Positions 25,135-55,814 of a DNA stretch of 64,000 nucleotides are shown piece by piece. How positions within the stretch are numbered: the stretch's first letter is position 1; each line of letters begins with the position of its first letter. The notes under the pieces were generated by a model. It was not told the DNA's origin, did not search any database, and worked only from the letters and a program-made list of their open reading frames with translations. A program made the translations under genes and the position numbers. The stretch lies in IMG/VR virus record IMGVR_UViG_3300035698_035310, positions 186,001 through 250,000 of that record; one strand, given 5' to 3'.

Positions 25135-25253
25135 TTGACAAATTTTTTACTTGGGGGTATAGTTAAGATAGGGAGGGATGAGTGAAATTTAAAATCCAAA
25201 AAAAACTCATCCCTCCCTACGGTCAGTTTAGCACGTATTGAAAAGATGGTCAA
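25135..25253. promoter_or_regulatory. pair of face-to-face sigma70-type promoters, each initiating at AGGGAGGGATGAG
   Basis: Plus: TTGACA 25135, TATAGT 25158, motif 25169-82. Minus: TTGACC 25253-48, TAAACT 25230-25, motif 25219-06. Both have 17-bp spacers. Confidence 0.75.
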
Positions 25254-25528
25254 GTGTTTATTTCATTTTTTTGTATAATTGTGATATAGTGGGGCACTTA
25301 TATAAGGAGTGAATAGAAATTGAAAACGTGTGAATATTGTGAAAGGGAAGTGGTTAGTGAAATTCCCAAGGAGTCTGGCAAGGGTCGATGTTGTGGTATA
25401 GAATGTGGGCACCGTATAATATATGGTATATGGGATGAAGATTGCAGGCAGGTTATTGTTGAAGAAACTGATTGACATATAGAATGGGTGTGGTATGTAT
25501 AGATCATCATTAACCAAAGGAGATTATT

Positions 25529-25768
25529 ATGTCTAAAGCTATTATATCGCATCGCGCCATTTCTGATATGTGTATTGGCATATTGAAGAATCAATCCAAG
25601 ACGGCATTTACATTGGGCGAGTTCCAACAAGTGGCGGTTCCTATTATACAGACGGTGTTCCCTAACAACAACACTGTAAAGGATACGACACGTTATTCTT
25701 TACAGCAGTTACGCGACGCTGGTGTTGTTCGGTTTGTTGACGACGCTGGTATCTACAAAATTCTTTAA
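25529..25768 (+). CDS. stand-alone DpnI C-terminal-like winged-helix domain
   Basis: FTLGEF...VFPNNNTVKDTTRYSLQQLRDAGVVRFV...G.YK resembles the DpnI wH pattern FTL...F.KNNHIKEKIRQQLQILRD..IEF..G.Y. Confidence 0.65.
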   Translation: MSKAIISHRAISDMCIGILKNQSKTAFTLGEFQQVAVPIIQTVFPNNNTVKDTTRYSLQQLRDAGVVRFVDDAGIYKIL

Positions 25769-27864
25769 TCCTTGACGTCATAAGTTAAGTGTGATATGGT
25801 GCAATTAGATTGTTTGAACGGAAGGAACTATTATGGATCGTGAAGCACTTATAGAATTTCTCAAAGAAGAGATGGAACTTGAACTTAGCATTAGTGGTCA
25901 ATACCGCAATGCATTATGTGTTGAGATTAAAATCGGTGGCGAGTCGATAAGCTCGGATATCATTTCTGTTTCTGAATTCACGGATTGAAAGAAAACTCAT
26001 GGCTGATATGTATAACTATCATTTTGTGATGTCTAGTTACTCGCATACTGATAGGCGGCAATTGTGGCAAGTATGTTCTAAGCCATTTATACGGCAAGCA
26101 GACGCAGATACATGGATGGAATATATGCAAAGCGAAGAACCAAAAAAAGAGTTCTTTGTAATTGATCGCGAAATGCCACGTCACCATGATGAAAAATTTG
26201 ATTAGGTGGTTGACGTCATACATTAAGTGTGATATGGTGCAGTTATAATCTGATAGTTTCTGTTATGCCTTTCTTCAAAACATGAGGCACGTGATACAAT
26301 TCATCCTGCAAATGGTAATGTTGGGAACTATCAGATTAGTAAATTTTTGAAAGGAATTTATTATGTCACGATCACGGCGGAAAGTTAAAGATATCAAATG
26401 GCAGAAAGGGAAAGTGTGTCCTAAGTGTCGAAAGGGTAATTTGGTTGGTTGTGGTCAATCCAAGAAGAAAGGACACGAGAAGTGTGTTTTTTGTAGTGTT
26501 TGCAAGGTGGCTAATTTTTAATGGAAAGGAACCAACATGCCTAATGTATTGACGGTATTGAATATCAACAGTCCTTATGATGACACGGTGTCATTGCATA
26601 CTGATTGGCAGGGTGCTTATGAATCAATGGTTGACATGTTGCAATTATGTCATGTTGATTGTTCAAACATCAATCTTGAAGAGTCTGAGATCGATTTTGA
26701 ACTTGAAGACAACAAGGGCGAGTTATGGAAATGCACTATTCATTGTGATGTTGCAGTTCCCACTTGACACTTATTATAAGTGTGATATGGTGCAGTTAAA
26801 TTGAATGGAAAGGAATATACAATGATGCTCACAAAAACGAAAACGGTTGATACACTTATTGATGCGTTTAATGCGTCGGATTCACCCTCGGATCGATATG
26901 CAATTGGTAGTGCATTACGTAGCGAACTGGCGAATTTTGTTAAAAACCTTGATGAAACGATTTTGCCGATTTATCATAAGTGCGTTGTTGCCGATGTTCT
27001 TAAACCGATTAAGGGATAAGGGCAATGGTAAGCGTTGTTGAAAAAAGTGGCATCCGGTTTGTATGTCGTAAGCCAGCAAAGCAAGGCACGTATCTTTGTG
27101 TTGACACGGTTGATTTATATGCCAAGGGGTTAACGATTGGTCCTATACAAACGGCATTTATCAGTGAGAATTGGACATTGCGTTCGGTTAATTTAACTGT
27201 GAATGTGGAGAGGTGGTTGACGCGTAGTGGGCATATTCGCAAAGATTATAAGCGGCTGCATTTTTCTGAAAAAACGATTGAAGAATTGTTAGGAGATAAA
27301 AAATGAGAGTTAATTCGTTTGATTATTTAACAAGTCGTTTGGATCAGTTATCGAAAGATCGCGGCTCTCAGTCAAGCAATACTACGAGCGCATTGTGTAA
27401 CGTGTTCAATATTATGGGATCAATCACCTTTAATGAAATATATGAAGGGTTGGTTGATTATACGAACACAAATCACATGAAATCGGACGACGGATTTGAT
27501 CGTTTTCATGGTTGTGTTGGTGAAGGGTTTCATAAGTATTTCAGGCAAATTGATATGTTTGAAGATTATCAACGACCCGACGGCGAAGAAATTGGTGGTT
27601 ATTTGGATATGATTGCGTGGCATCTTATTGCTGGTAATAAAGCATTTTGGACTGTGTTTGCGGAACTTAGTTGGATTCATCATGAACTCACTAAGAATCC
27701 AGACCTTAATGTTGTTCGGTTGATTCGTGATGTTCGTAATGACGTTGAAGATTATTATGAAGATCAAAAGAAAAAAGATTGACATAATTGTCACACTGTT
27801 GTATAGTTAGATTATAGAAATTCACGCGTATATGTTCGGTGAGTTTTTCCAGCGAAACCTTTCT

Positions 27865-27906
27865 AAAAAATGCCTCACTGATCCTTTCACAGTGGGGCAT
27901 TTTTTT
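27865..27906 (+). terminator. intrinsic terminator
   Basis: AAAAAATGCCTCACTG / CAGTGGGGCATTTTTT. Confidence 0.75.
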
Positions 27907-27967
27907 GTCTTGACATATATGAATGATTGGGTTATCATGGTATACTTAACAATAAAGGGAATATTAC

Positions 27968-30199: not shown

Positions 30200-30210
30200 A
30201 GGATAATATC

Positions 30211-30669: not shown

Positions 30670-30738
30670 TAACACTTGACACTGACATCAATTGTGCTAA
30701 TATCTTGGTATAGTTAATCAATAGAAAGGAAATTCCAC

Positions 30739-32460: not shown

Positions 32461-32500
32461 AATGCTTGACACTTATAGGGTGTTGTGGTATAGTTATAAA

Positions 32501-33521: not shown

Positions 33522-35821
33522 TATGAAAAAACGTCCAATTGATATCAGGCGCGAAGGGCTTCATACGCAAGACCCTGCTATAACCTTGAAACAATTATTC
33601 GATTCTACCGATGGTGGATTGTGGGATCATAAAGGTGTTACTGACGCATGGGTATCATATAAGGATTCCAAAGGTCAACTGTATGGTAGCCATAAGTGCG
33701 TCCATGAGGTATGTATCGAAGGACGTGAATACAAAGTATCGCAATCTGCATTACCTAATTGGGGAATTCATATTTTGTTTACGGATGAAGTATATAAACC
33801 AAAAATAAATTATGTGACGCAAATGCGTTCATTAAATTTATTCATTAACTGTTAAAAAGGAGATTGATATGCAATTAGGCGATTCAGTTAAAGATTTAAC
33901 CGGCGACTTCGAGTTGGGTGAAATTATTGATATATATACGAACCGTCACGGCGACCATCCGGTTATTATGTATACGGTCGATTTTGGCGATGATAATGTA
34001 TTTGATCGATTGTTTCATGAAATAAGTGCTTGACTATTGGTTCAGTTATGTTAGATTAACTGTATTGAAATGAAAGGAAACATTATGGCTAAATCGATGT
34101 TTGAAGTTGAATGGATTTCGGAACAGGGTGGTGGACATACCATTTTGTCAGAAGAGGTTGCGGCGGAAGACGAAGGCGAGGCGATGGATGTTGCCTATGA
34201 TGATTATTATTTCTTGAAATTAATATCTGTAAATCATTTATATGACATTGAAGGAGAAACGCCGTGAAAACCAAAAAGATATATGTTACGATTGCGGTAG
34301 AAGTTAAAGAAGACTTCAATATGCAGAAAGCGTATACTGAAATGACATACGCGTTGGATCATGATGATATCGTCGGTACTGAAATCGTTGATGTTGAAAC
34401 ACAATTGAGTCGATATGGATGGGAGGACTGATATGCGCGGCACAAAACCATTAGCCCCTATGTCGAACTGGCACCGGTTGTTGACCATGTTGAGTTTGAA
34501 TGGTGGATCATTATACCGAGCACAACTGTATACTGCCAAACCTAAGATCAAAAAATATGTTGATCATGACGGCAATACCAAATATAAATCAATTCCAGCA
34601 AAAGACCTTCACACTTATATCGATACTGGCAAATTGCGCAAAGTGACTTGTGTATCATCATTTGCGCCATTGTCATATGCATATGAGCATCGGGCGGAAA
34701 GCATGGGATTGGTTCATATTAAAAAATTCAATAATCGCAAATGGATTACGTTGTTGCCAAAGGGACGTGCCGTGTTGGCGATGTTGGATGTTGGAAAGAA
34801 ATGGGTTCCAGAAACGAAAATTGAAAGGGAGTTTATTCGATGAGTAATATCTTTACAGCGCCGTTAGGGCTTGTATACGAAATCGACGATCAGAACTATA
34901 TCACTACTTCCGTGACTATGGACTTAAATGAGATCATCGATACCAACAACGAAGGGTTTCTTGATGCATTATCTATCTATGCTACAGATACTGAATTGTT
35001 AATGGATATTGATTATAAACTTCTGCGCATTGACGAACATGGTGCACTAGTGTTTAGAGTCCATGGCGATTTATCGGCGATCACAGATGACTGATAAACC
35101 AAAATCTAAACGGGGTCGAAAGAAAAAGGAACCGGAACCTCCTACCCCGACGAATTTGGTTCATTGTACATTGATGGCATGCGGCATGGTTCATCTTGAT
35201 CCAGCCAAGTGTCCCAAATGCGGCAATGATGATTCACAGCGCCCACTTAAGTTTGTAGGTGTTCCCATTTATATGACAATTGTTTAGGAGTAGCATATGA
35301 CTAAAATGATTTACACTGTAGTGCGCCGTCCCAAGGTTGGACGTCATGGGTTAACCACCATTGGGTGGGCGGAAGAATGTGGCAGAGAAGCGATTGTCAC
35401 GGGTGGTTATTTACATACTCGACGCACGTTACCGGGGGAACAAACTTATTACACGGCAATCATGACAAAAGCGAACTTTGATAGATGGCTCGGCGACAAA
35501 TTTGAAACCCGTGCACAAGCCGCGTTCGCTATATGGCGTCTATATTATAAAAATGAGCGTGCGAAACGTGATCAAGATAAAGCGAATGAAGCGAATGGAA
35601 AACATGCACGTGCGGTCGGGCGGAAACATAAACGCGAACATCGTGCGACGCCTGAAGGACAAGAAGAACGCCGGTTGATGTTAAATCGTAAAGCAAAAGA
35701 AAAGCGTGATAACATGACGGATGAACAGCGCAAGGCGATCAATGATAAACTTAAGAAACGTCGTGCGCATAAGAAAGAATTCGGTTGACATTGTGGAAAC
35801 ACTTGTTATATTAGTAACATC

Positions 35822-35895
35822 GGGGGCATAGCTCAGTGGTAGAGCAGTGGGTTCTAAACCCTTTGTCGGGAGTTCGACTCTCCCTGCCCTCGCCA
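35822..35895 (+). tRNA. tRNA with CUA anticodon (amber suppressor), Trp-like body
   Basis: Acceptor GGGGGCA/TGCCCTC, D arm GCTC/GAGC, anticodon loop TT-CTA-AA, T arm GGGAG-TTCGACT-CTCCC, G73 and encoded CCA; own TTGACA promoter at 35785. Confidence 0.92.
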
Positions 35896-36592: not shown

Positions 36593-36997
36593 GTCTTGAC
36601 ATATCGCTTGACACTGTTATTATACTGGTAGGGAGGGATGAGTTTTTTCTGGATACATTATGATAAAAATAAGTGCTTGACAATTGGTTCAGTTATGTTA
36701 GTATCATAATCAGAAAAGGGAGATGAAAAATGATTGGATTCTTACTATACATTGTAGCATTATTCATGTTATTGACTATACCATCTAATATATGGATTGT
36801 TCCATTATTGTTTGGTATGTTGTTTCATTGGAAAATGTGGTTGACTGGTATTGCTGCATTCTTTGTAGGAGCAGGGTTCAATAAAAACTTTTAACTGCAT
36901 CAAAATAAATGCTTGACACGACGAAATAACCTGCTAATATCACTACATCAAACGACACTTACGGGCTTTTACTTAACACTAATAGGAGACTATCACC

Positions 36998-39184
36998 ATG
37001 CAAATCAAAACAGAAAATCGAGAAGTTGGGCGTTCCGGCACTTCAAACGAACGGACGTTTAACATCGATATGACTGCCAAGGCATTTAAGATTCTATCCG
37101 ACGGATTGTATTCGGATAAAATTCTTGCTGTTGTTCGTGAACTTTCTTGTAATGCCAAGGATTCACATATCGACGCTGGCAAAAATGACGTGCCTTTCGA
37201 AATTCACCTACCGAATTCACTTGAGCCGTGGTTCGCGGTTACTGATTACGGACTTGGGTTATCACCTGACGATGTATTGGAAATGTATTCCACTTATTTT
37301 GCTTCAACCAAAACGGGTTCAAACGATGTAACGGGGTGTCTTGGACTTGGTTCTAAATCGCCTTTTGCTTATACCGATTCGTTTTCAGTTGAAACACGTT
37401 GGAATGGCACACTTACTGTATTTTCATGTTTCTATAACGAGGCAGGTATCCCCTCAATCGTTATTTTGGGTGACGAAGACGGAATGCCTACCGACGAAGT
37501 GAACGGCGTTACCGTTAAAATGGCTGTAAACGATGGTGACATGCGCGAATTCGCACAAAAGGCAATGAAGGCACTTGATCGCTTTGATCCTGCCCCTATC
37601 GTTACTGGTAACACTGATTATGAAATTGTTACTAAGACTTATACGGTTGAAGGCAAAGGCTGGAAGATGCTTGAACGTGAAAGTTCATATGGTGAAAGCA
37701 AAATCCATGCTATCCAAGGCAATGTAACATATCCAATTAGTTCACAATCATTAGGCGACTTGACAAGCAATCAAGATGCAATTATGGGATTGACAGTTGA
37801 TTTGTTCTTTGATATCGGCGAGTTGGACGTTGCGGCAAACCGCGAGGCGTTGGGTTATGATGAAGCAACGATTAAAAATATCAAGGCTAAACTTGATGCC
37901 GTATCGACTGAAATTGCCCCATTGTTTCAGGATAAATTTAAGGATTGTAAAACACTTTGGGATGCGCGTTTGTTGTTCAAAGAAGTGATCAATCCTTTGA
38001 CATCTGGCTTGCAACGGATTCTATCTGACAACAATGTTGGGTTGAAATGGAAAAAGCAATCACTATCTGATTCGTTCAAATTGGATCGCGATGATTTTCC
38101 TAACGTTCAGATTGTATCATTCCAAAAGAATACACGCGGTGGACGTGGGCAAACTGCGGAATGGAGTTATAACGGTGATATTAAATTCCCCGCCAGTTCC
38201 GATATTCTGTTTTTCTATGACGATGTTGGCAATGGTTCGCATAGCCGAGTGACTCATTTTATGGAAACAAATGGTGACTCTGTTCGTTATCAGCATATGT
38301 TCAAAACCGACGATAAAAAAATGATGAAAAAGATTTCTAAGGCGTTGGGTAATGTTACTATTCAACCTGTAAGCAATCTTGAAAAACGCCCCAAGGCTGT
38401 TCGCCAAGCGCGACGAGTTACATCAAAGGTTTTGGAATATGTTGGACGCGCCCATGATCGCCGTGATAGTTGGAATCCTACTGATCTGGATTTAACGACT
38501 GGTGGTGTTTATGTTATGATTGATCGCTTTAAGGTATATGATTCCAATAATGGTTCAGGACGTGAACGTGAAGATTTTAACACCATTGTCGATTTGGCGA
38601 AAGAACATAAAATCGTTGACTTGACTAACAAGATCGTTTATGGAATTCGTAAAGGTGATGTTGATAAATTGAAAGATGATTCTGGTTGGGTTAATCTTTT
38701 CGACCTGATCCGCGACAAACTTACGGTTGCGGTTAAAAAAGAAAAGGTGGCGCAAGTTATGGCTGACCGTTATGCCTATCACCAGTTTTCAAATGATTTA
38801 TCATCGTTCGTTAATGATATGGATGATACTGATTTGGCAAAGGATTCAGTTATTGGAATATTCAAACGCGCACATGAATATCTTTCAAACCGTGATTCAT
38901 CTAAGGCACAAGCGATTTCAAGTGTTGCGGATAGCGTAGGATTTACGTTAAAATCTGCCAAGCCAAAACACGATCTTGGGAAACTTTGGGACGCTGTTAA
39001 AAATAAGTATCCATTATTGAAACTTGTTTCTGACAGTGATTTGCGCGGCGGTTATTACAACAATCGCGACAACTCTATCAGTGAAAATAACCATGCGGCA
39101 TTGACTGATTATATCGCGATGGTTGACGCAAAAGACGCAGTGCCAGAAAAGCGTAAAATCCTTACGTTGGCCTCGGCGGCATAA
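36998..39184 (+). CDS. rIIA: rIIA protein (GHKL ATPase N-terminus)
   Basis: LSDGLYSDKILAVVRELSCNAKDSH...TDYGLG...STK...GCLGLGSKSPFAYT; directly upstream of rIIB. Confidence 0.9.
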   Translation: MQIKTENREVGRSGTSNERTFNIDMTAKAFKILSDGLYSDKILAVVRELSCNAKDSHIDAGKNDVPFEIHLPNSLEPWFAVTDYGLGLSPDDVLEMYSTYFASTKTGSNDVTGCLGLGSKSPFAYTDSFSVETRWNGTLTVFSCFYNEAGIPSIVILGDEDGMPTDEVNGVTVKMAVNDGDMREFAQKAMKALDRFDPAPIVTGNTDYEIVTKTYTVEGKGWKMLERESSYGESKIHAIQGNVTYPISSQSLGDLTSNQDAIMGLTVDLFFDIGELDVAANREALGYDEATIKNIKAKLDAVSTEIAPLFQDKFKDCKTLWDARLLFKEVINPLTSGLQRILSDNNVGLKWKKQSLSDSFKLDRDDFPNVQIVSFQKNTRGGRGQTAEWSYNGDIKFPASSDILFFYDDVGNGSHSRVTHFMETNGDSVRYQHMFKTDDKKMMKKISKALGNVTIQPVSNLEKRPKAVRQARRVTSKVLEYVGRAHDRRDSWNPTDLDLTTGGVYVMIDRFKVYDSNNGSGREREDFNTIVDLAKEHKIVDLTNKIVYGIRKGDVDKLKDDSGWVNLFDLIRDKLTVAVKKEKVAQVMADRYAYHQFSNDLSSFVNDMDDTDLAKDSVIGIFKRAHEYLSNRDSSKAQAISSVADSVGFTLKSAKPKHDLGKLWDAVKNKYPLLKLVSDSDLRGGYYNNRDNSISENNHAALTDYIAMVDAKDAVPEKRKILTLASAA

Positions 39185-40492: not shown

Positions 40493-40867
40493 CCCGAATG
40501 TGATATAGGGTAAATAAAAGGGGGTTGGTAGAAATGCCAGCCCCTTTTTTATCATAAAGGAGTCGTTATGACATATTACAGTGATTATCCAAGTGTTCCA
40601 ATTGGCGGGAGCAATCCTTATTATAAGTGTTCATATTGTGGCATATCTGATCCACAAATCAATGGCACCCTTGAAGGGCATTATGAAGATTGTGAATATC
40701 GTATCATCAAAGAATTGGAACTACGCATCAAAGAATTAGAAGCAAACCCATAGCGTTCGACCCATAGGTGCTATGGGTTTTTTGCTATAGAACCTATAGA
40801 AATAGTTCTTGACAATTGGTTCAGTTAGTCTATAATACCTTTATAACTTAAACGAAGGGAAATACAA

Positions 40868-41404: not shown

Positions 41405-42298
41405 ACTTTAAATAAAATTCAGAAAATGTCAAGAGAAATCTTGACATTTTTTGTTATATTATTATTCCAGAAAAAACTCATCCCTCCCTACCATAAGAAT
41501 ACCATATTCAACATATAAGTCAAGCATTTATTTGCACTTGACATAAAAATAAATACGGTTATAATGGTAGTTCAATTAAAAGGAGATGATATGACTATTA
41601 AAACAAAAGGATTACTTATAACCTTTCTATATGTTATGTTGGGGTTAGTTTCATATATGATGATAGGCGACTTTACAGTGTTCGCTTGGATTGATCCTTG
41701 GGTATATATATACATGGCATTGTGGCCTTTGATTTGGGCATGGACATTCATCAAGTGGGCTGCGATCATTGCGGTGATTGTAATTGTTGGTATTATTGCC
41801 CATGAAAAATGGAGTAAATAAGTTCAAAATAAGTGCTTGACTCTTGGTGCACTTAGTTCTATGGTGCACCAACTGCAACGAATCAGAAAGGTAACTCCGA
41901 TGTTTGATATCAAAAACTCACTACGCGAAATGACCGCTCAATTCGACGAAATCGTAAAACACGATTTATCCGAAACACCTACCGTTTTGGCTATGATTCA
42001 TTTTCGCAATAAGTTAATTGAATTTCAATTAGCACCACACCTTGTTGATAAAGTGGTTGCGAAACTCGACATCACACTTCCACAAAACCTCGACGAAGAA
42101 ACAATGGAAGCGGTATTTGAATATCTTGAAGGGGTTGCGAAACTTGCTCTGCATTGTTGGGAAGCGACGACAATACACTTTAACAATAGCGAAGATGTAT
42201 TTTTCAGCATGTTCGATGATGTTGAGTTAAAAATCACTTAACGCTTGACAGTTGGTGCACTTAGTTGTAAGGTGCATCAACTGAAAAGGAGATGACCG

Positions 42299-43045: not shown

Positions 43046-43558
43046 ATGATTCCAAACCTTACCAGCGATGGTGACAATTGGGTCAATGGTTCGATTGGTG
43101 TGTTTAAAATTTGCGCCAAAGTTTTTTCTGAACCATCAGTTTTTGGTATCAAGAATGGACGCATTAGCAAATTGCAAGTGTGCGATACTTCACAATTACA
43201 TTGGGGTTTTGATGGTTGTTATTTGAATTATGACCGTGGTTGGGATATGCGCCCAAAGAATGAACCAGAACGTAAGTTCTTAAATGACTTGCTTACTGCA
43301 TTCGGCGATGATATCATGGAAGGCGACGACTATGTTTGGTATGACCTTTATGGTTATGCAGATCAAGCCGCGTTTGATCGGTTAGATCGCGAACATTTGA
43401 TGTCAGTTGATACCAAAAACGAGGCGCTTGAAGAAGCGCAAGGTTACATCAAACATGATGACGCATTTGATATCATCAAAGTTCGATGTTCCGATGATGA
43501 AGACGATGACGAAGTTATCTTGAAAAAAGACTTGACGGAAAAGGCGGTTGCTGTATAA
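43046..43558 (+). CDS. hypothetical protein
   Basis: W..G....KVFSEPS.FGI..GRISKL...NYDRGWD; its stop overlaps the -10 of the next promoter. Confidence 0.65.
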   Translation: MIPNLTSDGDNWVNGSIGVFKICAKVFSEPSVFGIKNGRISKLQVCDTSQLHWGFDGCYLNYDRGWDMRPKNEPERKFLNDLLTAFGDDIMEGDDYVWYDLYGYADQAAFDRLDREHLMSVDTKNEALEEAQGYIKHDDAFDIIKVRCSDDEDDDEVILKKDLTEKAVAV

Positions 43559-43564
43559 TACAAT

Positions 43565-44150
43565 TATTGAATTCGCCCGAAAGGGCACACGAGTTGCTAG
43601 GACCACGGTGTGTATACGCACTGAATAGAACAGAGGTTCTAACCCTCTGAATTCCAGTTAGGTTTGCTGGATTATGGAATAGCCGACATGCGACGGTATG
43701 GTCTGGTGAAATCATAATAGTTCAATAGCATTAAATTTGTTACGCTGGAACTGAAATGAAGGCGTTACTATGGGAAGCCATTTAAGGTGAGTGGTTCAGT
43801 GCTTAACGAAGATGATATGTCTGGAGTGGTCCAGTGAAAATAGGACGAGTCAAAACGTCAACATATTAGCTTCCCGAATTAATTATTGCTGGTAAGGTTC
43901 TGCTCAAGCGTTCATAGCGTAGAGATAAACTGCAAAAGATGATAAAATCCGTAAGGAGTTTGTTCCACTTGTAGTGAATGATGGTTCGGGTATTAGTAGT
44001 GCCCTTATGCAAAGTGCAAATCCCATCACAGCAAAACATAGTTAATATCGTTGAACTCTATCCTATTGGAAGGTGAAACTGAAATCCGTATGGCAAAGTA
44101 ATCGATTTAGATCATGCGAAGTTATTAGGTTACGATATTATTAGTTAAAT
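43565..44150 (+). ncRNA. large structured RNA, unit A (about 590 nt)
   Basis: Promoter TTGACG 43532/TATAAT 43554; nested helices 43565-71/43721-27, 43772-78/43869-75, 43886-91/44029-34, 44043-51/44132-40; GNRA hairpins; no ORF of 60 aa or more on the plus strand. Confidence 0.7.
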
Positions 44151-44189
44151 AATGCTTGACAGTTTATGTATGTTGAGGTATTATAAAGA

Positions 44190-44860
44190 ATAGAATGTGA
44201 TGGAAGGTTGGTATCTTCTTCGGTGGCACAAACCACGGGTAGCTTAAATACCAGAACGTAAGTTCAGAAAAGCACATTCCCTAAGTTTAGGTTAAAAGCA
44301 TCGAGGCGTAGTGGCTGGTAGGTGTTATAACCTTAGCGAAATGTAGCGGCACTGGTTGGGTTTACACGACTTGGCAAAGACTGCATCAGAGTAGCTTGAA
44401 ATGGGTGGTGCCGATACGAAGGCAGATGATATAGGGAGTGCGCACAAACTATATTATTTCATGCGGAGCATGGACACGCAGGATTTGCCCAAATGGGCAC
44501 ACGAGCTTGCGATAGTGTACGATGCACGACGTACCTAGAATACAGCCGGTAGTGAGCCAGTAAAGTTACACTCACAAGGAGGTTGCTAGGACATTTAATG
44601 ATGTAACACATTGAATGTATATGGGTTAACCATTGAAGCAGAGTGGGTTTAATTCCTACGCGCATTTCCAATTCCCGAAAGGGAATACGACGTTGGTATG
44701 TTGATCGTCGGCAAATACATCGGCACCCGTGTTAACCTTGGAGTACACGTTAAATAAATCCAAGGGATAGGTTCGCCCTATGCCCGATGATTCTACAGGG
44801 AAATGGTTGTTGAATCACTTGTGTAGAGAACCCCCCTCTGCTAATACCAACCAAAAAATA
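44190..44860 (+). ncRNA. large structured RNA, unit B (about 670 nt)
   Basis: Promoter TTGACA 44156/TATTAT 44179; helices 44193-99/44273-79 and 44638-43/44836-41; H-type pseudoknot 44728-65; GNRA hairpins; shares motifs with unit A. Confidence 0.7.
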
Positions 44861-45420
44861 TAGGGAGCGTGGCTGAAATGTAGCAAATCAGGTGTGTCAC
44901 GTAAGTTAATCTACTGAAAATTTGTTGCCCCTGCCTAAGTGGGTTAATTGGGTTTTATAGAAAAGTAGTATATAATATGTAGGGAATTTGCGAAAGAACG
45001 TAAGTGGAGCCGATACAAGTGATAGGAAATTAGACCTTGACGTGGACGCTAAGAAGTTTACAATCTGAATTTCAAAACAATTCATCGTGGTGATACTTAA
45101 CACCAGTAGAACAAATAACAGTAAGGAACGATGGAGCCGGATATCCATGCTATAAAAAACCGGCATACTTATTCGCCCGAATGGGCAAACAGTTTTGGAT
45201 TAAATGGGCGTAGCTCATTAGCGGTGAAGACGTAAGTGCTTCTTTATTAAGAAACGCATAAGTGACATTCGCGATGTCATGGGGTGAAATCCCTCAATCC
45301 AAATTTAACTATACGCAGGGCAATCCCGTAAGACGTAAGTGTTTCCAAATCACAAGACCTCCTTTCGTTAAATATTGTGATTGAATGAAGCCCCATCAGC
45401 ATCCAGCGGTGGGGTTTTGT
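44860..45420 (+). ncRNA. structured RNA, unit C, with a tRNA-like T-loop subdomain and terminator
   Basis: ATTCGCCCGAATGGGCA (45171) is nearly identical to 43571; 8-bp helix 45194-201/45296-303 enclosing GGGGTGAAATCCC; terminator-like hairpin 45390-45420; boundaries uncertain. Confidence 0.5.
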
Positions 45421-46102
45421 TTTTCCAATCATGCTCCCACATAACGACAAGATTATAACCCGAATCTTTAATAAGTGTTTCTTTTTTAAGTGTATTCTCA
45501 TATAGATGTTTGAACGGTTGTTTATTTGATGGATTTAGTTTGGTATGATCGGTGGTATTTGGATTACCATGCCAATAATCGCCGTGAAATTCATAAACCG
45601 TATTAGTCGTTGGATTATAACCATCCACTATGAATTGATTTATTTTAACTTGGCGATGATTTCTATCATTTGGAAGACCGATTGCATCAAGCCATTTTGT
45701 TTCTGATTTAGAAACATTATTGGTGCATTTTGCACAACCGCGACCTGATATATGATCTGTTGGGCGTTGCGTAAAGATACCATGTTTTTTGCATATTATA
45801 TTAATATTTGTTCGTTTATTAACATATATAGATTGTGAATAGTCATATTTACCACTGTGTGCAATATTGGATAAGATAATAAATTCATTCAATGTTCTTG
45901 TTTGTGTGATATTGCAACACTTATTGCATCCAATGCTACGTATATGATCGGCTGCACGTTGTTCAAATATACCATGATCGTCGCATATTATTTTTATTTT
46001 AGAATGTGAATGACTATATTCAACTAATGAATAATCATATACATCACCGTGAACGGCGATAGCTTCTTGTATGAATTTAGTGGTGGTTTTTCTTCTTGAC
46101 AT
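45368..46102 (-). CDS. free-standing endonuclease (DUF723-like repeats plus Vsr-like domain)
   Basis: YDYS.VEY....KIKIIC..HG.FEQ...DH...GC..C twice; VDGY...YEFHGDYWHGNP...MWEHDW. Confidence 0.85.
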   Translation of the reverse strand: MSRRKTTTKFIQEAIAVHGDVYDYSLVEYSHSHSKIKIICDDHGIFEQRAADHIRSIGCNKCCNITQTRTLNEFIILSNIAHSGKYDYSQSIYVNKRTNINIICKKHGIFTQRPTDHISGRGCAKCTNNVSKSETKWLDAIGLPNDRNHRQVKINQFIVDGYNPTTNTVYEFHGDYWHGNPNTTDHTKLNPSNKQPFKHLYENTLKKETLIKDSGYNLVVMWEHDWKNKTPPLDADGASFNHNI

Positions 46103-47715: not shown

Positions 47716-48366
47716 TTAGAATGTCATGCAATTTTCTATGACTCGAAGTTGAACATTTCCTAAACTGCGATGTCTGGTTTGTTTTAGGTTGAGTTTGAAT
47801 TTAATATCATCACTTTCTTCTAAGACTTTAGCAAACAGTTCGGGTTGCATTGTTAATCCAATATACAATAACCGCATAGTGCTTAATATCTTTCTTATTG
47901 GTTTGTCGAGTACAACTATTTCCTTGCCGGTAATAAGTGCGATAAACTTATCAAGGTTCATACAACCACGCACTGAGTTGCATTCGGAACAAGCCATAGC
48001 AAAGTTATGCTTGAAATTAGAACCACCTTTTGTCCTTGCAACAACATGTTCAACCGTGGCGCGGTTAGTGTCGTGGTGTGGAATCGCATCACCGTCGTCC
48101 AGTTTTGGATACCACATTGGGTCACCACAATAGCAGCATCTATGATTTTGTGCTTCTAATAATTTGATATTGCGGCGGCGGAGAAATCGAGTATTTCTAC
48201 CGCGTTTATTTTTACGCGTATTTTCTTTAGTTTTTTCTACGTTGCCACCATTAGCCGCATCATTCTCGAGACGTAGCGCACGCACTTCTTCGAGAGACAT
48301 GCCTTTTTCTCGCTCACGTTTGTGTTTTCGTTTTTCGGTTCGTCTGAGTTTTCCTAATGGTGTCAT
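47716..48366 (-). CDS. HNH endonuclease
   Basis: CCYCG...ATVEHVV....GGSN...N.AMAC.ECN..RG. Confidence 0.85.
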   Translation of the reverse strand: MTPLGKLRRTEKRKHKREREKGMSLEEVRALRLENDAANGGNVEKTKENTRKNKRGRNTRFLRRRNIKLLEAQNHRCCYCGDPMWYPKLDDGDAIPHHDTNRATVEHVVARTKGGSNFKHNFAMACSECNSVRGCMNLDKFIALITGKEIVVLDKPIRKILSTMRLLYIGLTMQPELFAKVLEESDDIKFKLNLKQTRHRSLGNVQLRVIENCMTF

Positions 48367-48419
48367 TACAAATCCTTTCAGTGGGGATAGTATAGAACCA
48401 TCCCCACTGATGTCAAGGG

Positions 48420-48959: not shown

Positions 48960-50865
48960 GGTAGTTCCTTCCGTTTCAATAAGTGCATTAGATACTATAG
49001 TGTATATGATGTCAACACTTTATTTTCACTTGACACCATTGTGCAATCGTGTATAGTGATAATCCAAACAACGAAAGGAACCGTTATGTTATCAGAAGAA
49101 GAAAAACGTTTTATTGCATTTTGTGCCGAACTTGGCAAACTTTCCGTGAAACATGGCGTTACCATTTATTCATGTGGTGGTGTTACTATTCACGACGTGC
49201 CATTATTAGAAGTGCTTTACATCGACGATGTATCAAGTGGTGATTTGGATTCAGTTATTGTAGAAAAGGAAATATAATGCCAACACTAAACATATGGGAA
49301 TTACCGGACAACACTGAAGTTGTTTATATCGACGTTGAAGGAAATCGTGTAACTGGTCGATTGGTAGAGAATTATGGTTCATATTTTGAATTCGTGCCAA
49401 AAGACGAAGATGCAAGTATGATGATTATGCATGACGTGGTTGATACCGTTGTTAAAGTCAGCGCAATAAAAACGGTTTCATTTGATTTTATCATGGATTC
49501 GTTTGTGTCTATACAGGCACCCGAAGGCACTGATCCTGATACATTGATTGAAAAAGCGATGATTGCGTTTCATGATTTATTGGCTGCGAATCAAGCCGAT
49601 GTCATATTTGATTCAACCATTCCAACATCTGAAAACACCGACCCATATGGAAACAAGTTATGAAAATATTTGAACCCATCGAACAATTATTTGATGAAAT
49701 GGAAGAGACCGGCATTAATATTGCACGCGCCGCAATAAGTGTCGAACTGAAAGCATTGAATGAAATGTTTCCGCGTCATACGTTCATGTATGAAGGACGA
49801 CAATGTTTGGATTATGTCAAGGTTTCGCCGCCGTTGCTTGGTGAAGAAAAACTTGTACCTTGGACATTTTCTGGTCCTAATTATTGGGATGGCAGGGCGA
49901 GTCAATTCCCCGCAATACAAAACATGGTGGAACACTTACAGCGGATTAATGATATCCATACCGAGTTGACTGTAATTACCCGCCGCAATACTGGTGTAGA
50001 AGAAGTTTTCTAAACAAAGGGGTTGACATAGCCCCTTGACTTCCCTACTATACTGGTAGGGAGGGATGAGGTTTATTTGGCTGCGAAAAATAACTGCACC
50101 AAAATGAAATAAAGTATTGACACCTTCTATCCAACCTGTATAATACCCACAGATTGAACGAAACGACTTACCCCGAAGGAACGAACAAATGGCTGATTCA
50201 AATTTTGTAGCGAAGCGAGTAGATGCCGGTGTCCCAATATGGACAATATTTGCTTACGGTAGGGACATTGGTTCTGCTACGGTTTTCGATTGGGAAGACG
50301 AAGGCCCAATGGCAACTGTTCGTTATGGGTATGATGATTTACCAGTTACGTTTTCGGGTTCTTCTATACGCGATGTATTGGCTAAGGTTGGCGCATTTTT
50401 GCGCACCATTGATTCTGATATGGAAGGCGAAGCCGCCGCCGAGTATTATAGCGAAGTTACAGGACCAATGGAAGCGGCGGAGCGTTTAGCAGAACGCGGG
50501 TATCGGGATGATGACCCTATTTGGTAATAGGGGTTGACATTAGGAATTGGGTGGTCTATAACGCCCTGAACTTAACAAAGGAACAAACAAATGTATAGCG
50601 TATATGATAGTTCGAGAGACCCGCGCATGGTAATACCCGAAGTTATGGCACGGACTGTATTCGATAGTATTATCGGCGAGTGGAAAATTGCCAAGTTAAA
50701 GGGTGGCGAAACTGAACGACGGTTTAAAGTTAAAGAATCGGCGCAATTCGTATTCGATAAACTTGGCGGTTTTACTATTTGTTTTATTGAAGGCGACTTA
50801 ATAATTAAGGGTTGACTCGCCCAATCCAATAGGCTATACAATAGGTCAACCAACGGAGAGAGATT

Positions 50866-52374: not shown

Positions 52375-52399
52375 CTATGGTTTTTTGATAAATACTTAT

Positions 52400-53134
52400 A
52401 TGGTAAAACGCAAAACAACAGAACAGTTTATACAAGAATCGACTGCAATTCATGGTGATGTATATGATTATTCATTGACCAATTATATCAATAGACGTAC
52501 CAAAGTAAAAATAATATGCACCGTTCATGGTATATATGAACAAACTGCGGGAAATCATTTATATCAAAAACAAGGTTGCTCAAAATGTGCCGGTGATAAA
52601 CAGGCATCGAGACAGCGAAAATCACTATCACAGTTTATTCAAGAGGCAACAATAGTTCACGATTCTTTATATGATTATTCGTTGGTGGATTACAATCATA
52701 CTGATATAAAAGTAAAAATAATATGCCCAACGCATGATATATTTAAGCAAACGCCGCATGATCATTTACATGGAAAAGGTTGCCCTAAATGCGTTCATAC
52801 TATATCAAAAGGTGAAACTAACTGGCTTAATCGCATTGGTTTACCAGACGATACACAACATAGACAAGTGCGCTTGCCTATGAATAATAATAAAAATCGA
52901 AGGGTTGATGGTTATGATCCATTAACCAATACTGTTTATGAATTTCATGGTGATTACTGGCATGGCAACCCCGCACGTTTTAATCTCGATGATATAAACC
53001 CAACCATTAAAAAACCATACAGACAACTCTATGAAGCCACCTTAACCAAGGAAGTGCTTATCAAAGATTCCGGTTATAATCTTGTAGTTATGTGGGAGCA
53101 TGATTGGAAAGCTCATCCCTCCCTAACAGTATAA
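52400..53134 (+). CDS. free-standing endonuclease (DUF723-like repeats plus Vsr-like domain)
   Basis: Paralog of 45368 and 57561; GATAAATA at 52387 just before the ATG, no structured leader. Confidence 0.85.
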   Translation: MVKRKTTEQFIQESTAIHGDVYDYSLTNYINRRTKVKIICTVHGIYEQTAGNHLYQKQGCSKCAGDKQASRQRKSLSQFIQEATIVHDSLYDYSLVDYNHTDIKVKIICPTHDIFKQTPHDHLHGKGCPKCVHTISKGETNWLNRIGLPDDTQHRQVRLPMNNNKNRRVDGYDPLTNTVYEFHGDYWHGNPARFNLDDINPTIKKPYRQLYEATLTKEVLIKDSGYNLVVMWEHDWKAHPSLTV

Positions 53135-55814
53135 TATTAAATTACTCGTAAAAAAGCAATGATTATTTTTATAATATGACGTAAATTACTTGTTGACATT
53201 GGTTCAGTTAGTTTGTAATATCTTTTTATCAGAACATCATACATTCACAAATGAAAGATTGAAAATAATGCCAACATATCGAAAAAGAATACTCATATCA
53301 GAATTCGCTGAACCAGAAATATTTTTTGAATATAAAGGTGTGAAAATATATCATACTTATACAGACAATGCTGAAACACTTTCATCATTGAATTTTGACC
53401 GTGATTGTAAAAGCAAGCGGTTGTTTACCACGAACAAAAAATGCGGCATGGTTCCCATGTTTGATGTTTATTTTGAAAACGATCTTCGTGTATGGGACAA
53501 ACAATCAAAAAATGAAACCCGTGGGGTGTTTAACATTCAAAACATTCCAAATCCTAAAGGGCATCATATTACGACTCATGCTGGTATTTCAAGAGTTCTT
53601 ATGGAAGCAATTGACACCGGTTGGATTAAAACTAATAAAACACCAGAGTGTATTCACGATTGTCATATACTCGCACATCCAAAATAATCACATCAAGGGG
53701 AGAAGTAAAACCTTTTCCCCTTGACTAACTTTAATAAGTGTGCTATGAATATATCATAATTGAAAAGGATACGAAAATGCATAACGCAGATGTTCTACAT
53801 AATGCCTTACTTACCGCAACGATGATGATGCGTAAAGGTCGTGCGTTTAAGATTGTTAGATATTCACCCAAACAAGAAACGGTTTATTATAGACCATTTT
53901 TCGCCAACGACCTGACTGACATACGCACTGACGAGTTGGATCACTTGTGCGACGATGATTCGATTCAGTTATTCACCACAACGCAACTCGAAACACAATA
54001 AGGAAAACCGATGCAAACTTATACCACCCCACGCTTAACGAACATAAGTGATACATTTCGCGCCGACGTTGCTGCGGGTGAATTAACTACATGGTGTGAA
54101 GAAAACAGTGTAGGTGCTTGGTTCATCCACGCCGTTGATCATGTGGAGTTTGAATTCCCCACAGATGCCAAACAATTTATGATGAAGTTTTGGGAGCTAG
54201 ACTCCTAAAAATCCCCCCGCATGTTCCTACGCAAGTAATGAAGACACTCCATGCGGGGGTTCTTTTTGTTTTGGCGCACCCAAAAAAAGCTCATCCCTCC
54301 CTATCAGCATAATAGCAGGGTCAATAGATAAGTCAACCATTATTATTAAAAATAAACCATTGACAACGGCTTTTGTATTTTATATAATATATAGATTGAA
54401 AAGGAGAATTGAAATGTCGCGCACTTATCGTAAGCTTCCTTATTGGTCAAATGATCCAAAATTAACACGTGAGCGAGGCTCCAAATGGACTGGCATGCGT
54501 GTTTTTGTTGCTCCTAATGGAAATGTATTCGGTTGGGATGATGAAGCCCTACGTAAAAAATCATCTAAACGTCGCACCAATCGCATTCGCCGTTTGATGG
54601 GCAAGAAAGAAATTGTTCTTGCCGTTGCTGCTATGGCAGAAGACGCAATGGAAGACCTCAACGAAATGATGGATTGGGAAGCCGAAGAGTATTGCGATAC
54701 ATATTACGACGAGTATGAATTGTCTGAATGGGCTGATTGGAAACAGCGTGAAATTGATGATCAAGCAATTGAAGAATATTATTTAAATGAAGACCCATAT
54801 TATTACGATTTTGATTATTAAGGGTTGACATCACTATTTGATTTCGTTATGATTCATCCAAGCTAACAACACAACATAAATCTTGAAAGGATTTAACTAT
54901 GGCTAATAAATTCACAATCACACGCACTTATGATCGCGATGAAATTATTGACACAGTTAATAAATCCATTGAACAAAACGGAACATATCATCAAATCAAA
55001 TCGTTGCTTGATACTTTATATACTGGATGGTTTTTTGATATAGAAACGGCTTGCGAAGTTGAATTGATTTTACGCGAAAAGGGCGATTTTATTCGCGAGT
55101 TTTATCAAGAACGGCTAGACGAAATGAATGCTGCCAAGAAATTTGACTTGGTATAACTATTCACTTAAGATAACAACACAACATAAATCTTGAAAGGATT
55201 TAACAATGTCTAAAACAATTTCCCGCGTAGACTTCATTGAACTTATGGCAGATGCTGCAATGCGACTTCCAGTAACACGCAAGCGCAAGCCAGAGGATGA
55301 CCCATCTGAATTCATCGACTTGTTTGATTATGATGCAATGTCAAACGAATGGTCGAAAGGTGTTCAGTGGCTTCGTGGCGTTGGTGATAGTGGCACTTAT
55401 AAAGTTCCGACACCCGATGGAACATTCAAGCGCGTTCCAATGCGAACTATTGCTGAAATGCCAGCGTTCATTCAAGAGATTGTTACCGAGGCACAAACTC
55501 ATTTGAATATCGATTCGATTGTCGAGATCGCTTAACTAATCTTTAATCATTCGGTGCGATACTTCTTTATGAAAGGAGTATCGCACATGATTGATTTTTT
55601 ATTATACTATTCACTTGGTGGGGTTGTTTGGTGTGTATGGACTGAAGTTCTACACCGGAAAGGATTCTTAGCCAGACTAGGGTTGATTGTATTCATCCCT
55701 TTTGTTGCAATCACTTTAATGTTGGAATCAATACGAAATTAGTTATTGACTCTTTTATTAAAAAATGGTACACTTAGTTATACACTTATTATTAACATTT
55801 GAAAAGGAATTGTA

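What the first reader, a model, noticed from the sequence alone, without database searches (positions are those of the whole stretch)
25135..54336. Seven dispersed promoters that all initiate on the same AGGGAGGGAUGAG sequence
Seen: TAGGGAGGGATGAG occurs at 25169(+), 25219(-), 36629(+), 41490(-), 50057(+), 53125(-) and 54303(-). In each case a plausible -35/-10 pair (16-17 bp spacer) puts +1 on or next to the A, and six copies continue with a T-rich run (five as ...TTT..TGG). No ORF of 60 aa or more follows in register, four copies point against the local gene direction, and two face each other 23 bp apart. Inference: a family of short phage RNAs whose 5' end is a Shine-Dalgarno (GGAGG) jammed against an AUG. 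Possible roles are a 30S/anti-SD sponge, an antagonist of alphaproteobacterial CCUCC-loop sRNAs (cuckoo/alpha-r14 type), or a DNA site for a phage factor at +1.
Basis: partly seen in the sequence, partly recalled or inferred. Interest (0 to 1): 0.78.

Follow-up and report, generated by a model that had tools for sequence, protein, structure and literature searches.

The report
Phage promoter cassettes sharing one RNA start
A giant salt-lake phage carries 17 strong host-type promoters that all start transcription on the same ten letters (AGGGAGGGAU, a ribosome-binding-site look-alike), and about half make only short, gene-less RNAs; this looks like a new kind of phage regulatory RNA or promoter element whose partner is still unknown.

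Summary
TAGGGAGGGATGAG occurs 7 times exactly in the window against 0.13 expected. The whole 359-kb phage record holds 17 promoter-linked copies, all in one 52-kb block of small + strand early-type genes. Every copy has TTGAC-N16/17-(TGn)TATTAT, then exactly 6 nt, then the A, so the predicted RNA begins AGGGAGGGAU. Positions +1 to +10 are perfect in 16 of 17 copies and conservation decays from +11. Nine copies point antisense from intergenic gaps; seven of them run into terminators and should give 65-100-nt RNAs. Eight point sense and are usually followed by an ordinary promoter, then the gene. Short metagenome contigs of relatives carry the same cassette, some at orthologous sites. Cellular genomes, other viral contigs and Rfam do not. 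The AUG-led mini-ORF is not conserved. The core pairs strongly with a generic 16S 3' tail (-13 kcal/mol, top 1.5% of the phage's own RBSs) with the AUG inside the duplex. That pairing does not explain the invariance of positions 1, 2 and 8-10. Best reading, at about 0.35: cassettes producing RNAs with a 5'-terminal Shine-Dalgarno mimic or seed. A DNA/RNA-polymerase-level element is nearly as likely. No RNA data exist.

The parts
25135..25182 (+). Cassette c25169: -35 TTGACA 25135-25140, -10 TATAGT 25158-25163, predicted TSS A at 25170, core AGGGAGGGAT 25170-25179. It faces c25219; the two 14-mers form a perfect inverted repeat 23 bp apart.
25206..25253 (-). Cassette c25219: -35 TTGACC 25253-25248, -10 TAAACT 25230-25225, predicted TSS 25218, core 25218-25209, then a U8-GG tract.
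36596..36652 (+). Cassette c36629 (sense): -35 36596-36601, second TTGAC in the spacer, -10 TATTAT 36618-36623, TSS 36630, core 36630-36639, T-run then TGG to 36652. It directly follows a terminator hairpin.
   Evidence: conserved in relatives L126 and L128
36677..36894 (+). Ordinary downstream promoter P2 of the conserved-spacer class (TTGACA-att-GGTTCAGTTA...TAGTAT, 36677-36704), followed by an RBS and a 54-aa gene at 36730-36894; rIIA-like gene at 36998-39184.
41412..41523 (-). Orphan antisense unit c41490: -35 TTGACT 41523-41518, -10 TATTCT 41501-41496, TSS 41489, core 41489-41480, U-run-GG, A-rich linker, terminator hairpin 41450-41423 (GTCAAGATTTCTCTTGAC) and U tail. Predicted RNA about 75-80 nt.
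41538..41565 (+). Divergent ordinary consensus promoter (TTGACA-16-TATAAT) for the next + gene (called at 41591). Its -35 lies about 14 bp from the -35 of c41490.
50023..50080 (+). Cassette c50057 (sense): -35 50023-50028, -10 TACTAT 50046-50051, TSS 50058, core 50058-50067, GTTTATTTGG tract.
50117..50144 (+). Ordinary consensus promoter P2 (12/12 match) about 93 nt downstream of the c50057 TSS; gene at 50189-50527.
53112..53159 (-). Cassette c53125: -35-like TTGCTT about 53159-53154, -10 TATTAT 53136-53131, TSS 53124, core 53124-53115. It lies inside the 3' end of a + strand DUF723 (homing-endonuclease-like) gene and has no U-run-GG or nearby terminator.
54206..54336 (-). Orphan antisense unit c54303: -35 TTGACT 54336-54331, -10 TATTAT 54314-54309, TSS 54302, core 54302-54293, U-run-GGG, hairpin about 54259-54214, U tail 54211-54207. 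Predicted RNA about 97 nt.
54360..54388 (+). Divergent ordinary consensus promoter (TTGACA-17-TATAAT) for the gene at 54414-54821.

Best explanation
These are a distinct class of host-sigma70 early promoter cassettes. Their defining part is the first ten transcribed bases, so every transcript begins pppAGGGAGGGAU, usually followed by GAG, a U-run and GG(A). I think the element most likely acts as RNA: a 5'-terminal Shine-Dalgarno mimic or seed that base-pairs with a CCUCC-containing RNA, most probably the 3' tail of 16S rRNA on the 30S subunit, without starting translation. In the orphan antisense units this would give abundant, terminated 65-100-nt RNAs that hold the partner, acting as a decoy or sponge. 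In the sense units it would put a bound 30S at the very 5' end of long-leader early mRNAs, giving 5'-end protection or a standby site in the manner of STAB-SD. Shown: the copies, their promoter geometry, the fixed +1 register, the terminators, the strong complementarity, the lack of a conserved ORF, and the presence in related phages. Inferred: the TSS, RNA accumulation, the partner and the effect.
For: There are 17 copies, all with the core exactly 7 nt after a near-consensus -10. In this genome +1 to +10 is perfect in 16 of 17 copies; the one change, A5G, keeps a G.U pair, and conservation decays from +11. Seven antisense copies have no downstream gene and run into bidirectional terminators. 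An identical hairpin, GTCAAGATTTCTCTTGAC, occurs exactly 3 times in 359 kb, each time as such a terminator, so at least three units share both a 5' end and a 3' end like paralogous RNA genes. The core pairs over all 10 nt with a generic 16S tail at -12 to -13 kcal/mol. That is the top 1.5% of the phage's 460 scored RBSs (median -6.3) and the top 0.045% of random 10-mers. The AUG lies inside the duplex, whereas real genes have 5-7 nt of spacing. The mini-ORF is not conserved: it runs 2 to more than 25 codons, has stops at codon 3 or 5, and 3 members lack ATG. The same cassette occurs in relatives, including orthologous sites upstream of rIIA with flanks 70-76% identical. It is absent from cellular genomes (3 chance hits in about 600 Gb) and from other viral contigs. 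Ordinary mRNAs of this phage carry their RBS within about 15-25 nt of the TSS, and only the motif RNAs lack one. Precedent: STAB-SD is an SD near the 5' end that binds 16S, does not initiate translation and blocks 5' decay (PMC4113751). The phage also encodes a bS21 homolog, the protein next to the SD/anti-SD helix (PMC9723584).
Against: There is no RNA evidence at all. Among permutations of its own letters the core is only in the top 6% for anti-SD pairing. Positions 1, 2 and 8-10 add little energy yet never vary, and a better SD would have U at position 8. Some other sequence-specific constraint must therefore exist. The core is not predicted to be more single-stranded than shuffled-core controls. 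In the convergent pair it is locked in a perfect 14-bp hairpin. No complementary target exists in the phage genome. The host, and so its 16S tail, is unknown. A sponge for 30S would also compete with the phage's own weaker RBSs. The core identity seen in relatives is circular, because they were found by exact core match.
Confidence: 0.35

Rival explanations
1. The element works at the DNA or RNA-polymerase level. The invariant +1 to +10 would be an initial-transcribed-sequence element or an operator that marks a promoter class. For example, a very stable rG:dC hybrid followed by a weak rU:dA tract could give a long-lived promoter-proximal stalled polymerase that acts as an insulator or roadblock between a terminator and the next gene promoter. 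Alternatively it could be the binding site of a phage regulator that times this class. The RNA would be a by-product.
For: The 10-nt length equals the RNA length at promoter escape, and the invariance includes positions that pairing does not need. The cassettes work in either orientation and always sit in a gap, 45-144 bp after the upstream gene and before the next gene, usually next to an ordinary promoter. A convergent pair 49 bp apart (TSS to TSS) makes sense as a two-way barrier but not as RNA genes. The RNA bodies are unconserved. The same block has a second promoter class defined by an embedded conserved DNA element in the spacer, with about 22 copies. Lineage-specific palindromes (GGAATATATTCC, GGTTAAC) follow the core in some relatives.
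Against: Many G-rich sequences would give an equally stable hybrid, so invariance needs a specific binder that has not been identified. The orphan units carry dedicated terminators, including one conserved hairpin, which suggests the RNA ends matter. The U-run-GG does not match the consensus elemental pause at its key -10 position, and there is no -10-like sigma-pause element (read from the sequence, own knowledge). No sigma, AsiA or T7-type polymerase gene was found (two of these searches lacked a positive control).
Confidence: 0.3
2. The RNAs are decoys for an RNA-binding protein that recognises GGA or SD-like motifs, such as CsrA/RsmA. The core would be two overlapping A-R-GGA units (AGGGA plus AGGGAUG), with a third GGA about 15 nt downstream.
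For: AGGGAUG fits the CsrA high-affinity consensus A-R-GGA-U-G (own knowledge), which would explain the invariance of G8-A9-U10-G11. GGA recurs at +22 to +24 in 7 of 17 copies, and one RNA (genome 252383) has 6 GGA motifs. A proteobacterial host is likely.
Against: GGA is not enriched in the RNA bodies: 1.35 per 100 nt against a background of 1.0-1.4. Each RNA has only 2-3 sites and they are not placed in hairpin loops. It is unknown whether the host has CsrA, and the phage encodes none. This model does not require the strict +1 anchoring.
Confidence: 0.1
3. The RNAs are trans-acting base-pairing RNAs whose 5' seed targets a host RNA containing AUCCCUCCCU, such as a C-rich regulatory sRNA loop or an mRNA. 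That would make them anti-sRNAs or regulators rather than ribosome binders.
For: A contiguous, sharply bounded 10-nt invariant block at the extreme 5' end, then a U-rich tract, a variable body and an intrinsic terminator, is the layout of 5'-seed Hfq-type sRNAs (own knowledge). A perfectly complementary target would explain all ten invariant positions.
Against: There is no target in the phage genome. The host is unknown, so no target could be sought. Seed accessibility is not supported. The sense copies are fused to mRNAs.
Confidence: 0.1
4. The AUG is used: the cassettes would be minigenes or leader peptides (M-S/T-F-F-W or stop) that stall ribosomes or sequester tRNAs.
For: 28 of 31 members have ATG. 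Codon 2 is Ser or Thr through AGT, AGC, ACC, ACT and TCT, and many copies have a stop or TGG at codon 5.
Against: The AUG lies within or 1 nt from the SD duplex, whereas real genes have 5-7 nt of spacing. ORF length runs from 2 to more than 25 codons, some copies have stops at codon 3 while the downstream nucleotide register is still kept, three members lack ATG, and one ortholog reads MIFFFG.
Confidence: 0.05
5. The conservation is only a by-product of PeSL-type recombination and homogenisation of early promoter/terminator cassettes, and the +1 core has no function of its own.
For: The setting is a hyperplastic block of small ORFs, each with a consensus early promoter and a stem-loop, as described for PeSLs (PMC2839356, PMC4122927).
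Against: Conservation is discontinuous: the -35, the -10 and +1 to +13 are fixed while the spacers and flanks differ between copies. The core is kept in relatives whose flanks are only 70-76% identical. Nine of 17 copies point away from any gene.
Confidence: 0.05

Closest known systems
STAB-SD of Bacillus thuringiensis cry3A and the SP82 phage polypurine 5' stabiliser (PMC4113751; Hue et al. 1995, cited in PMC3997798 ref. 179)
   Same: Both are SD-like purine tracts at or near the RNA 5' end that are complementary to the 16S 3' end and are not used to start translation. One precedent comes from phage early RNA.
   Different: Those are single elements on one mRNA in Gram-positive hosts with RNase J1. 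Here there are 17 copies anchored exactly at +1, half on gene-less antisense RNAs, in a phage with a probably proteobacterial host, and the invariance goes beyond what pairing needs.
PeSL (promoter-early stem-loop) cassettes of T4-type phages (PMC2839356, PMC4122927)
   Same: Both are repeated composite terminator plus sigma70-consensus early promoter units between small ORFs in a plastic early region of a large T4-related phage.
   Different: PeSLs are defined by promoter and stem-loop, point with the gene they serve, and are not reported to have a conserved transcribed core. Here the defining part is the first 10 transcribed bases, and 9 of 17 copies are antisense orphans.
5'-seed, terminator-ended bacterial sRNAs in multi-copy families (RybB/OmrA-B type, Qrr type; own knowledge)
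   Same: They share an own promoter, an invariant seed at the exact 5' end, a U-rich tract, a variable body and an intrinsic terminator, with several paralogs carrying one seed.
   Different: No target is known here, the seed is a purine-only SD look-alike, the element is phage-encoded in 17 copies, and some copies are fused to mRNA leaders.
Lambda oop RNA (own knowledge)
   Same: It is a short (77 nt) phage RNA made from an orphan promoter pointing against the neighbouring gene and ending at a nearby terminator.
   Different: oop is single-copy and acts as an antisense RNA to cII. Here the overlap with the upstream mRNA is limited to the terminator, and the shared feature is the 5' end.
Purine-rich initial transcribed sequences of strong phage early promoters (T5 N25, T7 A1; own knowledge)
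   Same: These are strong sigma70 early promoters whose first 10-20 transcribed bases are G/A-rich and SD-like, and which influence promoter escape.
   Different: Those sequences differ from promoter to promoter, whereas here ten bases are identical across 17 promoters and across related phages.

Membership tests
Host sigma70-type promoter | -35 TTGACA, 16-18 bp spacer, -10 TATAAT (often TGn-extended), purine start about 7 nt downstream | tested here: met
   All 17 copies and the relatives fit. The A lies exactly 6 nt after the -10 hexamer in 31 of 31 members.
Host sigma70-type promoter | Experimentally mapped transcription start | not testable with these tools
   Only DNA runs hold the phage and no RNA run was listed.
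PeSL cassette | Repeated sigma70-consensus early promoter with an adjacent stem-loop, in a hyperplastic region of small ORFs of a T4-type phage | tested here: met
   The block of small + strand genes carries rIIA/rIIB homologs, with stem-loops abutting or overlapping the -35.
PeSL cassette | The promoter serves the ORF cassette that follows it, in the same orientation | tested here: not met
   9 of 17 copies point antisense with no gene for more than 4 kb.
PeSL cassette | Mediates recombination (mini-circles, indels between close relatives) | not testable with these tools
   The runs hold one identical strain, so no variants are available.
STAB-SD / 5' polypurine stabiliser | SD-like sequence complementary to the 16S 3' end | tested here: met
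   dG is -12 to -13 kcal/mol with a generic tail, in the top 1.5% of phage RBSs and the top 0.045% of random 10-mers. The host's own tail is unknown.
STAB-SD / 5' polypurine stabiliser | Located at or near the RNA 5' end and not used for initiation | tested here: met
   The predicted +1 is the first base of the core. The AUG lies inside the duplex and no ORF is conserved. The TSS is inferred, not measured.
STAB-SD / 5' polypurine stabiliser | Precedes and stabilises an mRNA | tested here: not met
   9 of 17 units have no downstream gene. Stabilisation itself is not testable here.
5'-seed trans-acting sRNA | Own promoter and intrinsic terminator giving a discrete small RNA | tested here: met
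   Seven antisense units have predicted RNAs of 65-100 nt, and three share an identical terminator hairpin. This does not hold for the sense units.
5'-seed trans-acting sRNA | Accessible seed with an identifiable complementary target | tested here: inconclusive
   Accessibility is no better than for shuffled cores. There is no target in the phage, and the host is unknown.
CsrB/RsmZ-type protein sponge | Many GGA motifs, mostly in hairpin loops | tested here: not met
   GGA is not enriched beyond the core, at 1.35 per 100 nt against 1.0-1.4.
Minigene / leader peptide | Properly spaced SD and AUG with a conserved short ORF | tested here: not met
   The spacing is 1 nt or negative against 5-7 nt in real genes. 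ORF length and sequence are not conserved and three members lack ATG.
Any Rfam family | Match at the gathering threshold | tested here: not met
   The only hit in the window is the tRNA.
T7-type single-subunit RNAP promoter (TATAGGGAGA-like start) | Conserved -17 to -1 specificity region and a phage single-subunit RNAP gene | tested here: not met
   Upstream conservation is -35/-10 of sigma70 type. There is no PF00940 hit, though that search had no positive control.

The most novel reading that the evidence does not exclude
The phage makes a multi-copy family of small decoy RNAs whose invariant 5' end captures the anti-Shine-Dalgarno tail of host 30S subunits. These would act together with the phage-encoded bS21 protein, which sits on that same helix, to re-programme which mRNAs the ribosome pool accepts early in infection. 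That would be an RNA-plus-protein ribosome takeover system not described for any virus.
Probability: 0.1. Interest if true: 0.9.

Novelty: new variant of a known kind. Interest (0 to 1): 0.62.

Why it matters
Early promoter cassettes in large phages have been treated as plain promoters or as recombination sites. Here one class is defined by what it transcribes: an invariant ten-base RNA 5' end that looks like a super-strong ribosome-binding site, repeated 17 times, half the time with no gene attached, and kept in related phages from other environments. If the RNA is the active part, it would be a new family of phage regulatory or decoy RNAs aimed at the ribosome or at an SD-binding factor, in a phage that also carries its own bS21. 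If the DNA is the active part, it would be a new way of marking a promoter class by its initial transcribed sequence. Either result is directly testable, because the promoters are consensus sigma70 and should work in E. coli or in vitro.

Tried and rejected
1. Exact 14-mer in IMG/VR: 101 single hits, none with a promoter in front, so all are chance.
2. Megablast of 6 kb against the phage collection found nothing. The rIIA-like protein is at most about 31% identical to known phages, and the search for related loci found no relative in viral contigs.
3. Rfam: no family.
4. Conserved mini-ORF MSFFW: rejected, because relatives and paralogs break it.
5. CsrB-like multi-GGA sponge: GGA is not enriched.
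6. Seed accessibility test: no difference from shuffled cores.
7. Targets in the phage genome: none beyond the copies themselves.
8. Phage-encoded partners: no CsrA, sigma70_r2 or Hfq. RegB, AsiA and T7-type RNAP searches also found nothing, but those three had no positive control.
9. RNA-seq evidence: only DNA runs hold the phage, and none was listed for RNA.
10. Strain microdiversity as an unbiased constraint test: the four runs hold an identical strain. The only differences come from paralogous DUF723 genes, and the loose ends at the motif come from other copies.
11. Cellular genomes: 3 isolated hits in about 600 Gb, so this is not a host element.
12. A sigma70-dependent pause element or a consensus elemental pause in the U-run-GG: not matched on reading the sequence.
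13. The paper by Hue et al. 1995 could not be read and is cited only through a review's reference list.


Full report
OBSERVATION. Chance expectation is 0.13, and none of 100 dinucleotide-preserving shuffles reached seven. The window is bases 186,001-250,000 of a 359,044-bp virus record. That record was cut from a 570,750-bp metagenome contig from salt-lake samples. Allowing mismatches, the genome holds 17 promoter-linked copies, all between 211,169 and 263,261 and none in the other 300 kb. Eight are on the + strand and nine on the - strand.

ANATOMY. Every copy has TTGAC(A/T), a 16-17 bp spacer, a -10 close to TATTAT (often with TGn), exactly six bases, and then the A. The predicted transcript therefore begins AGGGAGGGAU. 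In this genome, where I searched with mismatches allowed, +1 to +10 is perfect in 16 of 17 copies; the exception is A5 to G. Conservation is 16/17 at +11 and +12 and 12/17 at +13, followed by a T-rich run and often GG(A) at +22 to +24. The spacers and flanks differ between copies, so this is position-specific constraint and not recent duplication. Seven copies also have a second TTGAC in the spacer.

SETTING. My own crude gene map and public gene calls agree. The copies lie in one block of small + strand genes (genome 207-266 kb) that includes rIIA- and rIIB-like, SspB-like, UvrD, macro-domain and DUF723 genes. Nearly every gene there has its own consensus sigma70 promoter 15-25 nt ahead of an AAAGGA-type RBS. 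The motif promoters are different, because none is followed directly by an RBS.

TWO LAYOUTS. (a) Antisense copies (nine in total). Seven sit in intergenic gaps with the TSS 65-111 bp from the end of the upstream gene. They run through the U-run-GG and an A-rich linker into a bidirectional terminator shared with that gene, giving predicted RNAs of about 65-100 nt with no ORF and no - strand gene for more than 4 kb. The hairpin GTCAAGATTTCTCTTGAC occurs exactly three times in the record, each time as such a terminator and in the same orientation. The other two antisense copies are one inside the 3' end of a DUF723 gene and one in the convergent pair. (b) Sense copies (eight). For five, an ordinary promoter was scored 81-227 nt downstream (TSS to TSS), and others are visible by eye; an RBS and gene follow. 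In the divergent cases the two -35 elements are only about 12-22 bp apart. The two copies at 25169(+) and 25219(-) face each other with TSSs 49 bp apart, and their RNAs would fold into a perfect 14-bp 5' hairpin.

RELATIVES. A composite pattern of promoter plus core found the source contig and about 16 short contigs from other metagenomes. Five of these are ordinary promoter-RBS-gene cases, consistent with chance. Twelve (L115, L117-L120, L122, L124-L126, L128, L132, L133) are true members, and several carry two copies within 1-2 kb. L126 and L128 are orthologous to the copy upstream of rIIA, with flanks 70-76% identical, and L117 is orthologous to the copy at genome 257,255. In the three-way alignment the terminator stem varies by compensatory changes. 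The -35, the second TTGAC, the -10, the core and the downstream promoter are conserved. Relatives show both the tandem and the divergent layouts. One caveat applies: relatives were found by exact core match, so their core identity is circular. The same pattern gave only three isolated hits in about 600 Gb of prokaryotic genomes. The 14-mer gave only promoter-less single hits in IMG/VR, and Rfam has nothing. The element is therefore specific to this phage lineage.

IS THE AUG USED? After the core many copies read ATG-AGY-TTT-TTY-TGG (MSFFW), and codon 2 is Ser or Thr through five different codons, which looked like coding constraint. Across 31 members, however, the ORF runs from 2 to more than 25 codons. 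Two members have a stop at codon 3 while still keeping the downstream nucleotide register. One ortholog reads MIFFFG, and three members have ATC, ATA or ATT in place of ATG. Real genes of this phage have 5-7 nt between the SD duplex and the start codon, whereas here the AUG lies inside the duplex. I reject a conserved peptide.

SD MIMICRY. With a generic bacterial 16S tail (textbook sequence; the host is unknown), the core pairs over all ten bases with one bulged rRNA base, at -12.2 kcal/mol, or -13.0 with GAG included. The median of 460 phage RBSs is -6.3, and only 1.5% are as strong. Only 0.045% of random 10-mers of intergenic composition do as well. The control weakens this reading: 53 of 840 permutations of the same letters pair as well or better. 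Single changes at positions 1, 2, 8, 9 and 10 cost at most about 2 kcal/mol, yet these positions never vary, and U at position 8 would extend the pairing (compare AGGGAGGUGA at -15.8 kcal/mol among the permutations). Anti-SD pairing therefore explains G3-G7 but not the whole invariant block. The core reads as A-(GGGA)x2-U, which also fits two A-R-GGA units of the CsrA type (own knowledge), but GGA is not enriched in the RNA bodies. Folding gives no sign that the core is kept single-stranded.

POSSIBLE PARTNERS. The 359-kb record encodes no CsrA, Hfq or sigma70-family protein. Searches for RegB, AsiA and T7-type RNAP also found nothing, but they lacked a positive control. The record does encode an 80-aa bS21 homolog (E = 3e-15, above the Pfam cutoff; genome 53,219-53,461), whose nearest clusters are viral bS21. 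bS21 contacts the SD/anti-SD helix (PMC9723584). In Flavobacteria, ribosomes lacking it selectively read SDs stronger than -13 kcal/mol (PMC9976891). That link is suggestive only. The SspB-like gene is nearest to Pseudomonadota clusters, and the promoters and RBSs are of the classical type, so a proteobacterial host is likely.

WHAT IT MOST LIKELY IS. Two readings fit nearly equally well. RNA-level reading (about 0.35 for the SD-mimic/30S version, plus about 0.2 for other RNA partners): the exact +1 anchoring, the dedicated terminators on gene-less units, the SD likeness and the following U-rich tract are what one expects of RNAs whose 5' end is the active part. The closest precedent is STAB-SD and the SP82 polypurine stabiliser (PMC4113751; PMC3997798 ref. 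179). Those elements bind 30S near the 5' end without translation. In this phage every ordinary mRNA already has an RBS close to its 5' end, and only the motif RNAs would otherwise lack one. DNA/polymerase-level reading (about 0.3): ten bases is the length of RNA at promoter escape. The invariance exceeds pairing needs, orientation is irrelevant, the cassettes always sit between a terminator and the next gene, and the convergent pair makes sense as a barrier. In addition, the same block has a second promoter class marked by an embedded DNA element. The general setting matches PeSL cassettes of T4-type phages (PMC2839356, PMC4122927). PeSLs have no described transcribed core and point with their genes, so I do not file this element as a PeSL.

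LIMITS. No RNA data exist. The four DNA runs hold one identical strain, so no population test was possible. The TSS, RNA ends and gene map are predictions. The 16S tail used is generic. Only 359 of the 570 kb of the source contig were searched.

VERDICT. The element is a real, lineage-specific, multi-copy promoter-plus-5'-leader cassette with no described counterpart. Its mechanism remains open between an RNA 5' SD mimic or seed and an initial-transcribed-sequence or operator element.

Noticed in passing
window 34039-75685 (genome 220,039-261,685), e.g. 36677-36704, 40809-40836, 53193-53221: A second promoter class: about 22 + strand promoters share a conserved spacer, cTTGAC(A/T)nT-GGTTCAGTTA-gTTGC-TATAA(A/C). 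Each sits directly ahead of an RBS and gene, and the class is conserved in relatives L126 and L128. Several have C or A instead of T at the last -10 position, so they may need a phage factor.
   Followed up: partly
genome G000:C1:53,219-53,461 (+), outside the window (L139:1456-1698): The phage encodes an 80-aa ribosomal protein bS21 homolog (Pfam PF01165, E = 3e-15). Its nearest clusters are viral bS21.
   Followed up: partly
window 35822-35895 (+): A tRNA with anticodon CUA (amber suppressor type; ARAGORN labels it Pyl) with its own consensus promoter just upstream (-10 ending at 35812). TAG is the rarest stop among long ORFs (5 of 88), so TAG may be read through at some stage.
   Followed up: no
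window 24892-25003: Iteron-like direct repeats (GTTCTTGTTTTGTTC, 3-4 copies, period about 28-29 bp) lie about 170 bp to the left of the convergent motif pair, in a 430-bp gene-free gap. This is a possible origin or protein-binding array.
   Followed up: partly
window 41428-41445; genome 257,918-257,935 and 259,680-259,697 (all - strand): An identical 18-nt hairpin, GTCAAGATTTCTCTTGAC, occurs exactly three times in 359 kb, each time as the bidirectional terminator behind an antisense motif unit.
   Followed up: yes
window 43559-45368: A 1.8-kb stretch with almost no called gene, in an otherwise tightly packed block, with consensus promoters at about 43532-43559 and 44156-44184. It could hold a non-coding RNA, or genes broken by in-frame TAG codons.
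   Followed up: no
window 45368-46102(-), 52400-53134(+), 57561-58298(-); HNH-like 47716-48366(-): Three paralogous DUF723 genes (244-245 aa, homing-endonuclease-like) and an HNH gene are scattered in both orientations through the early block. Motif copy c53125 overlaps the 3' end of one of them.
   Followed up: no
whole record: The 359,044-bp 'provirus' record is part of a 570,750-bp metagenome contig (Ga0222634_1000003), and a 570,549-bp ENA contig also carries it. The real genome may therefore be much larger than the record, and the provirus call may be a trimming artefact.
   Followed up: no
relatives L118, L120, L132 and L115, L119, L124, L133: Lineage-specific palindromes follow the shared core at about +21 to +35: GGA(A/T)TATATTCC in one group of contigs and GGTTAAC(...)GTTAACC in another. 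This hints at a lineage-specific second partner, either a hairpin or a dimeric protein site.
   Followed up: partly
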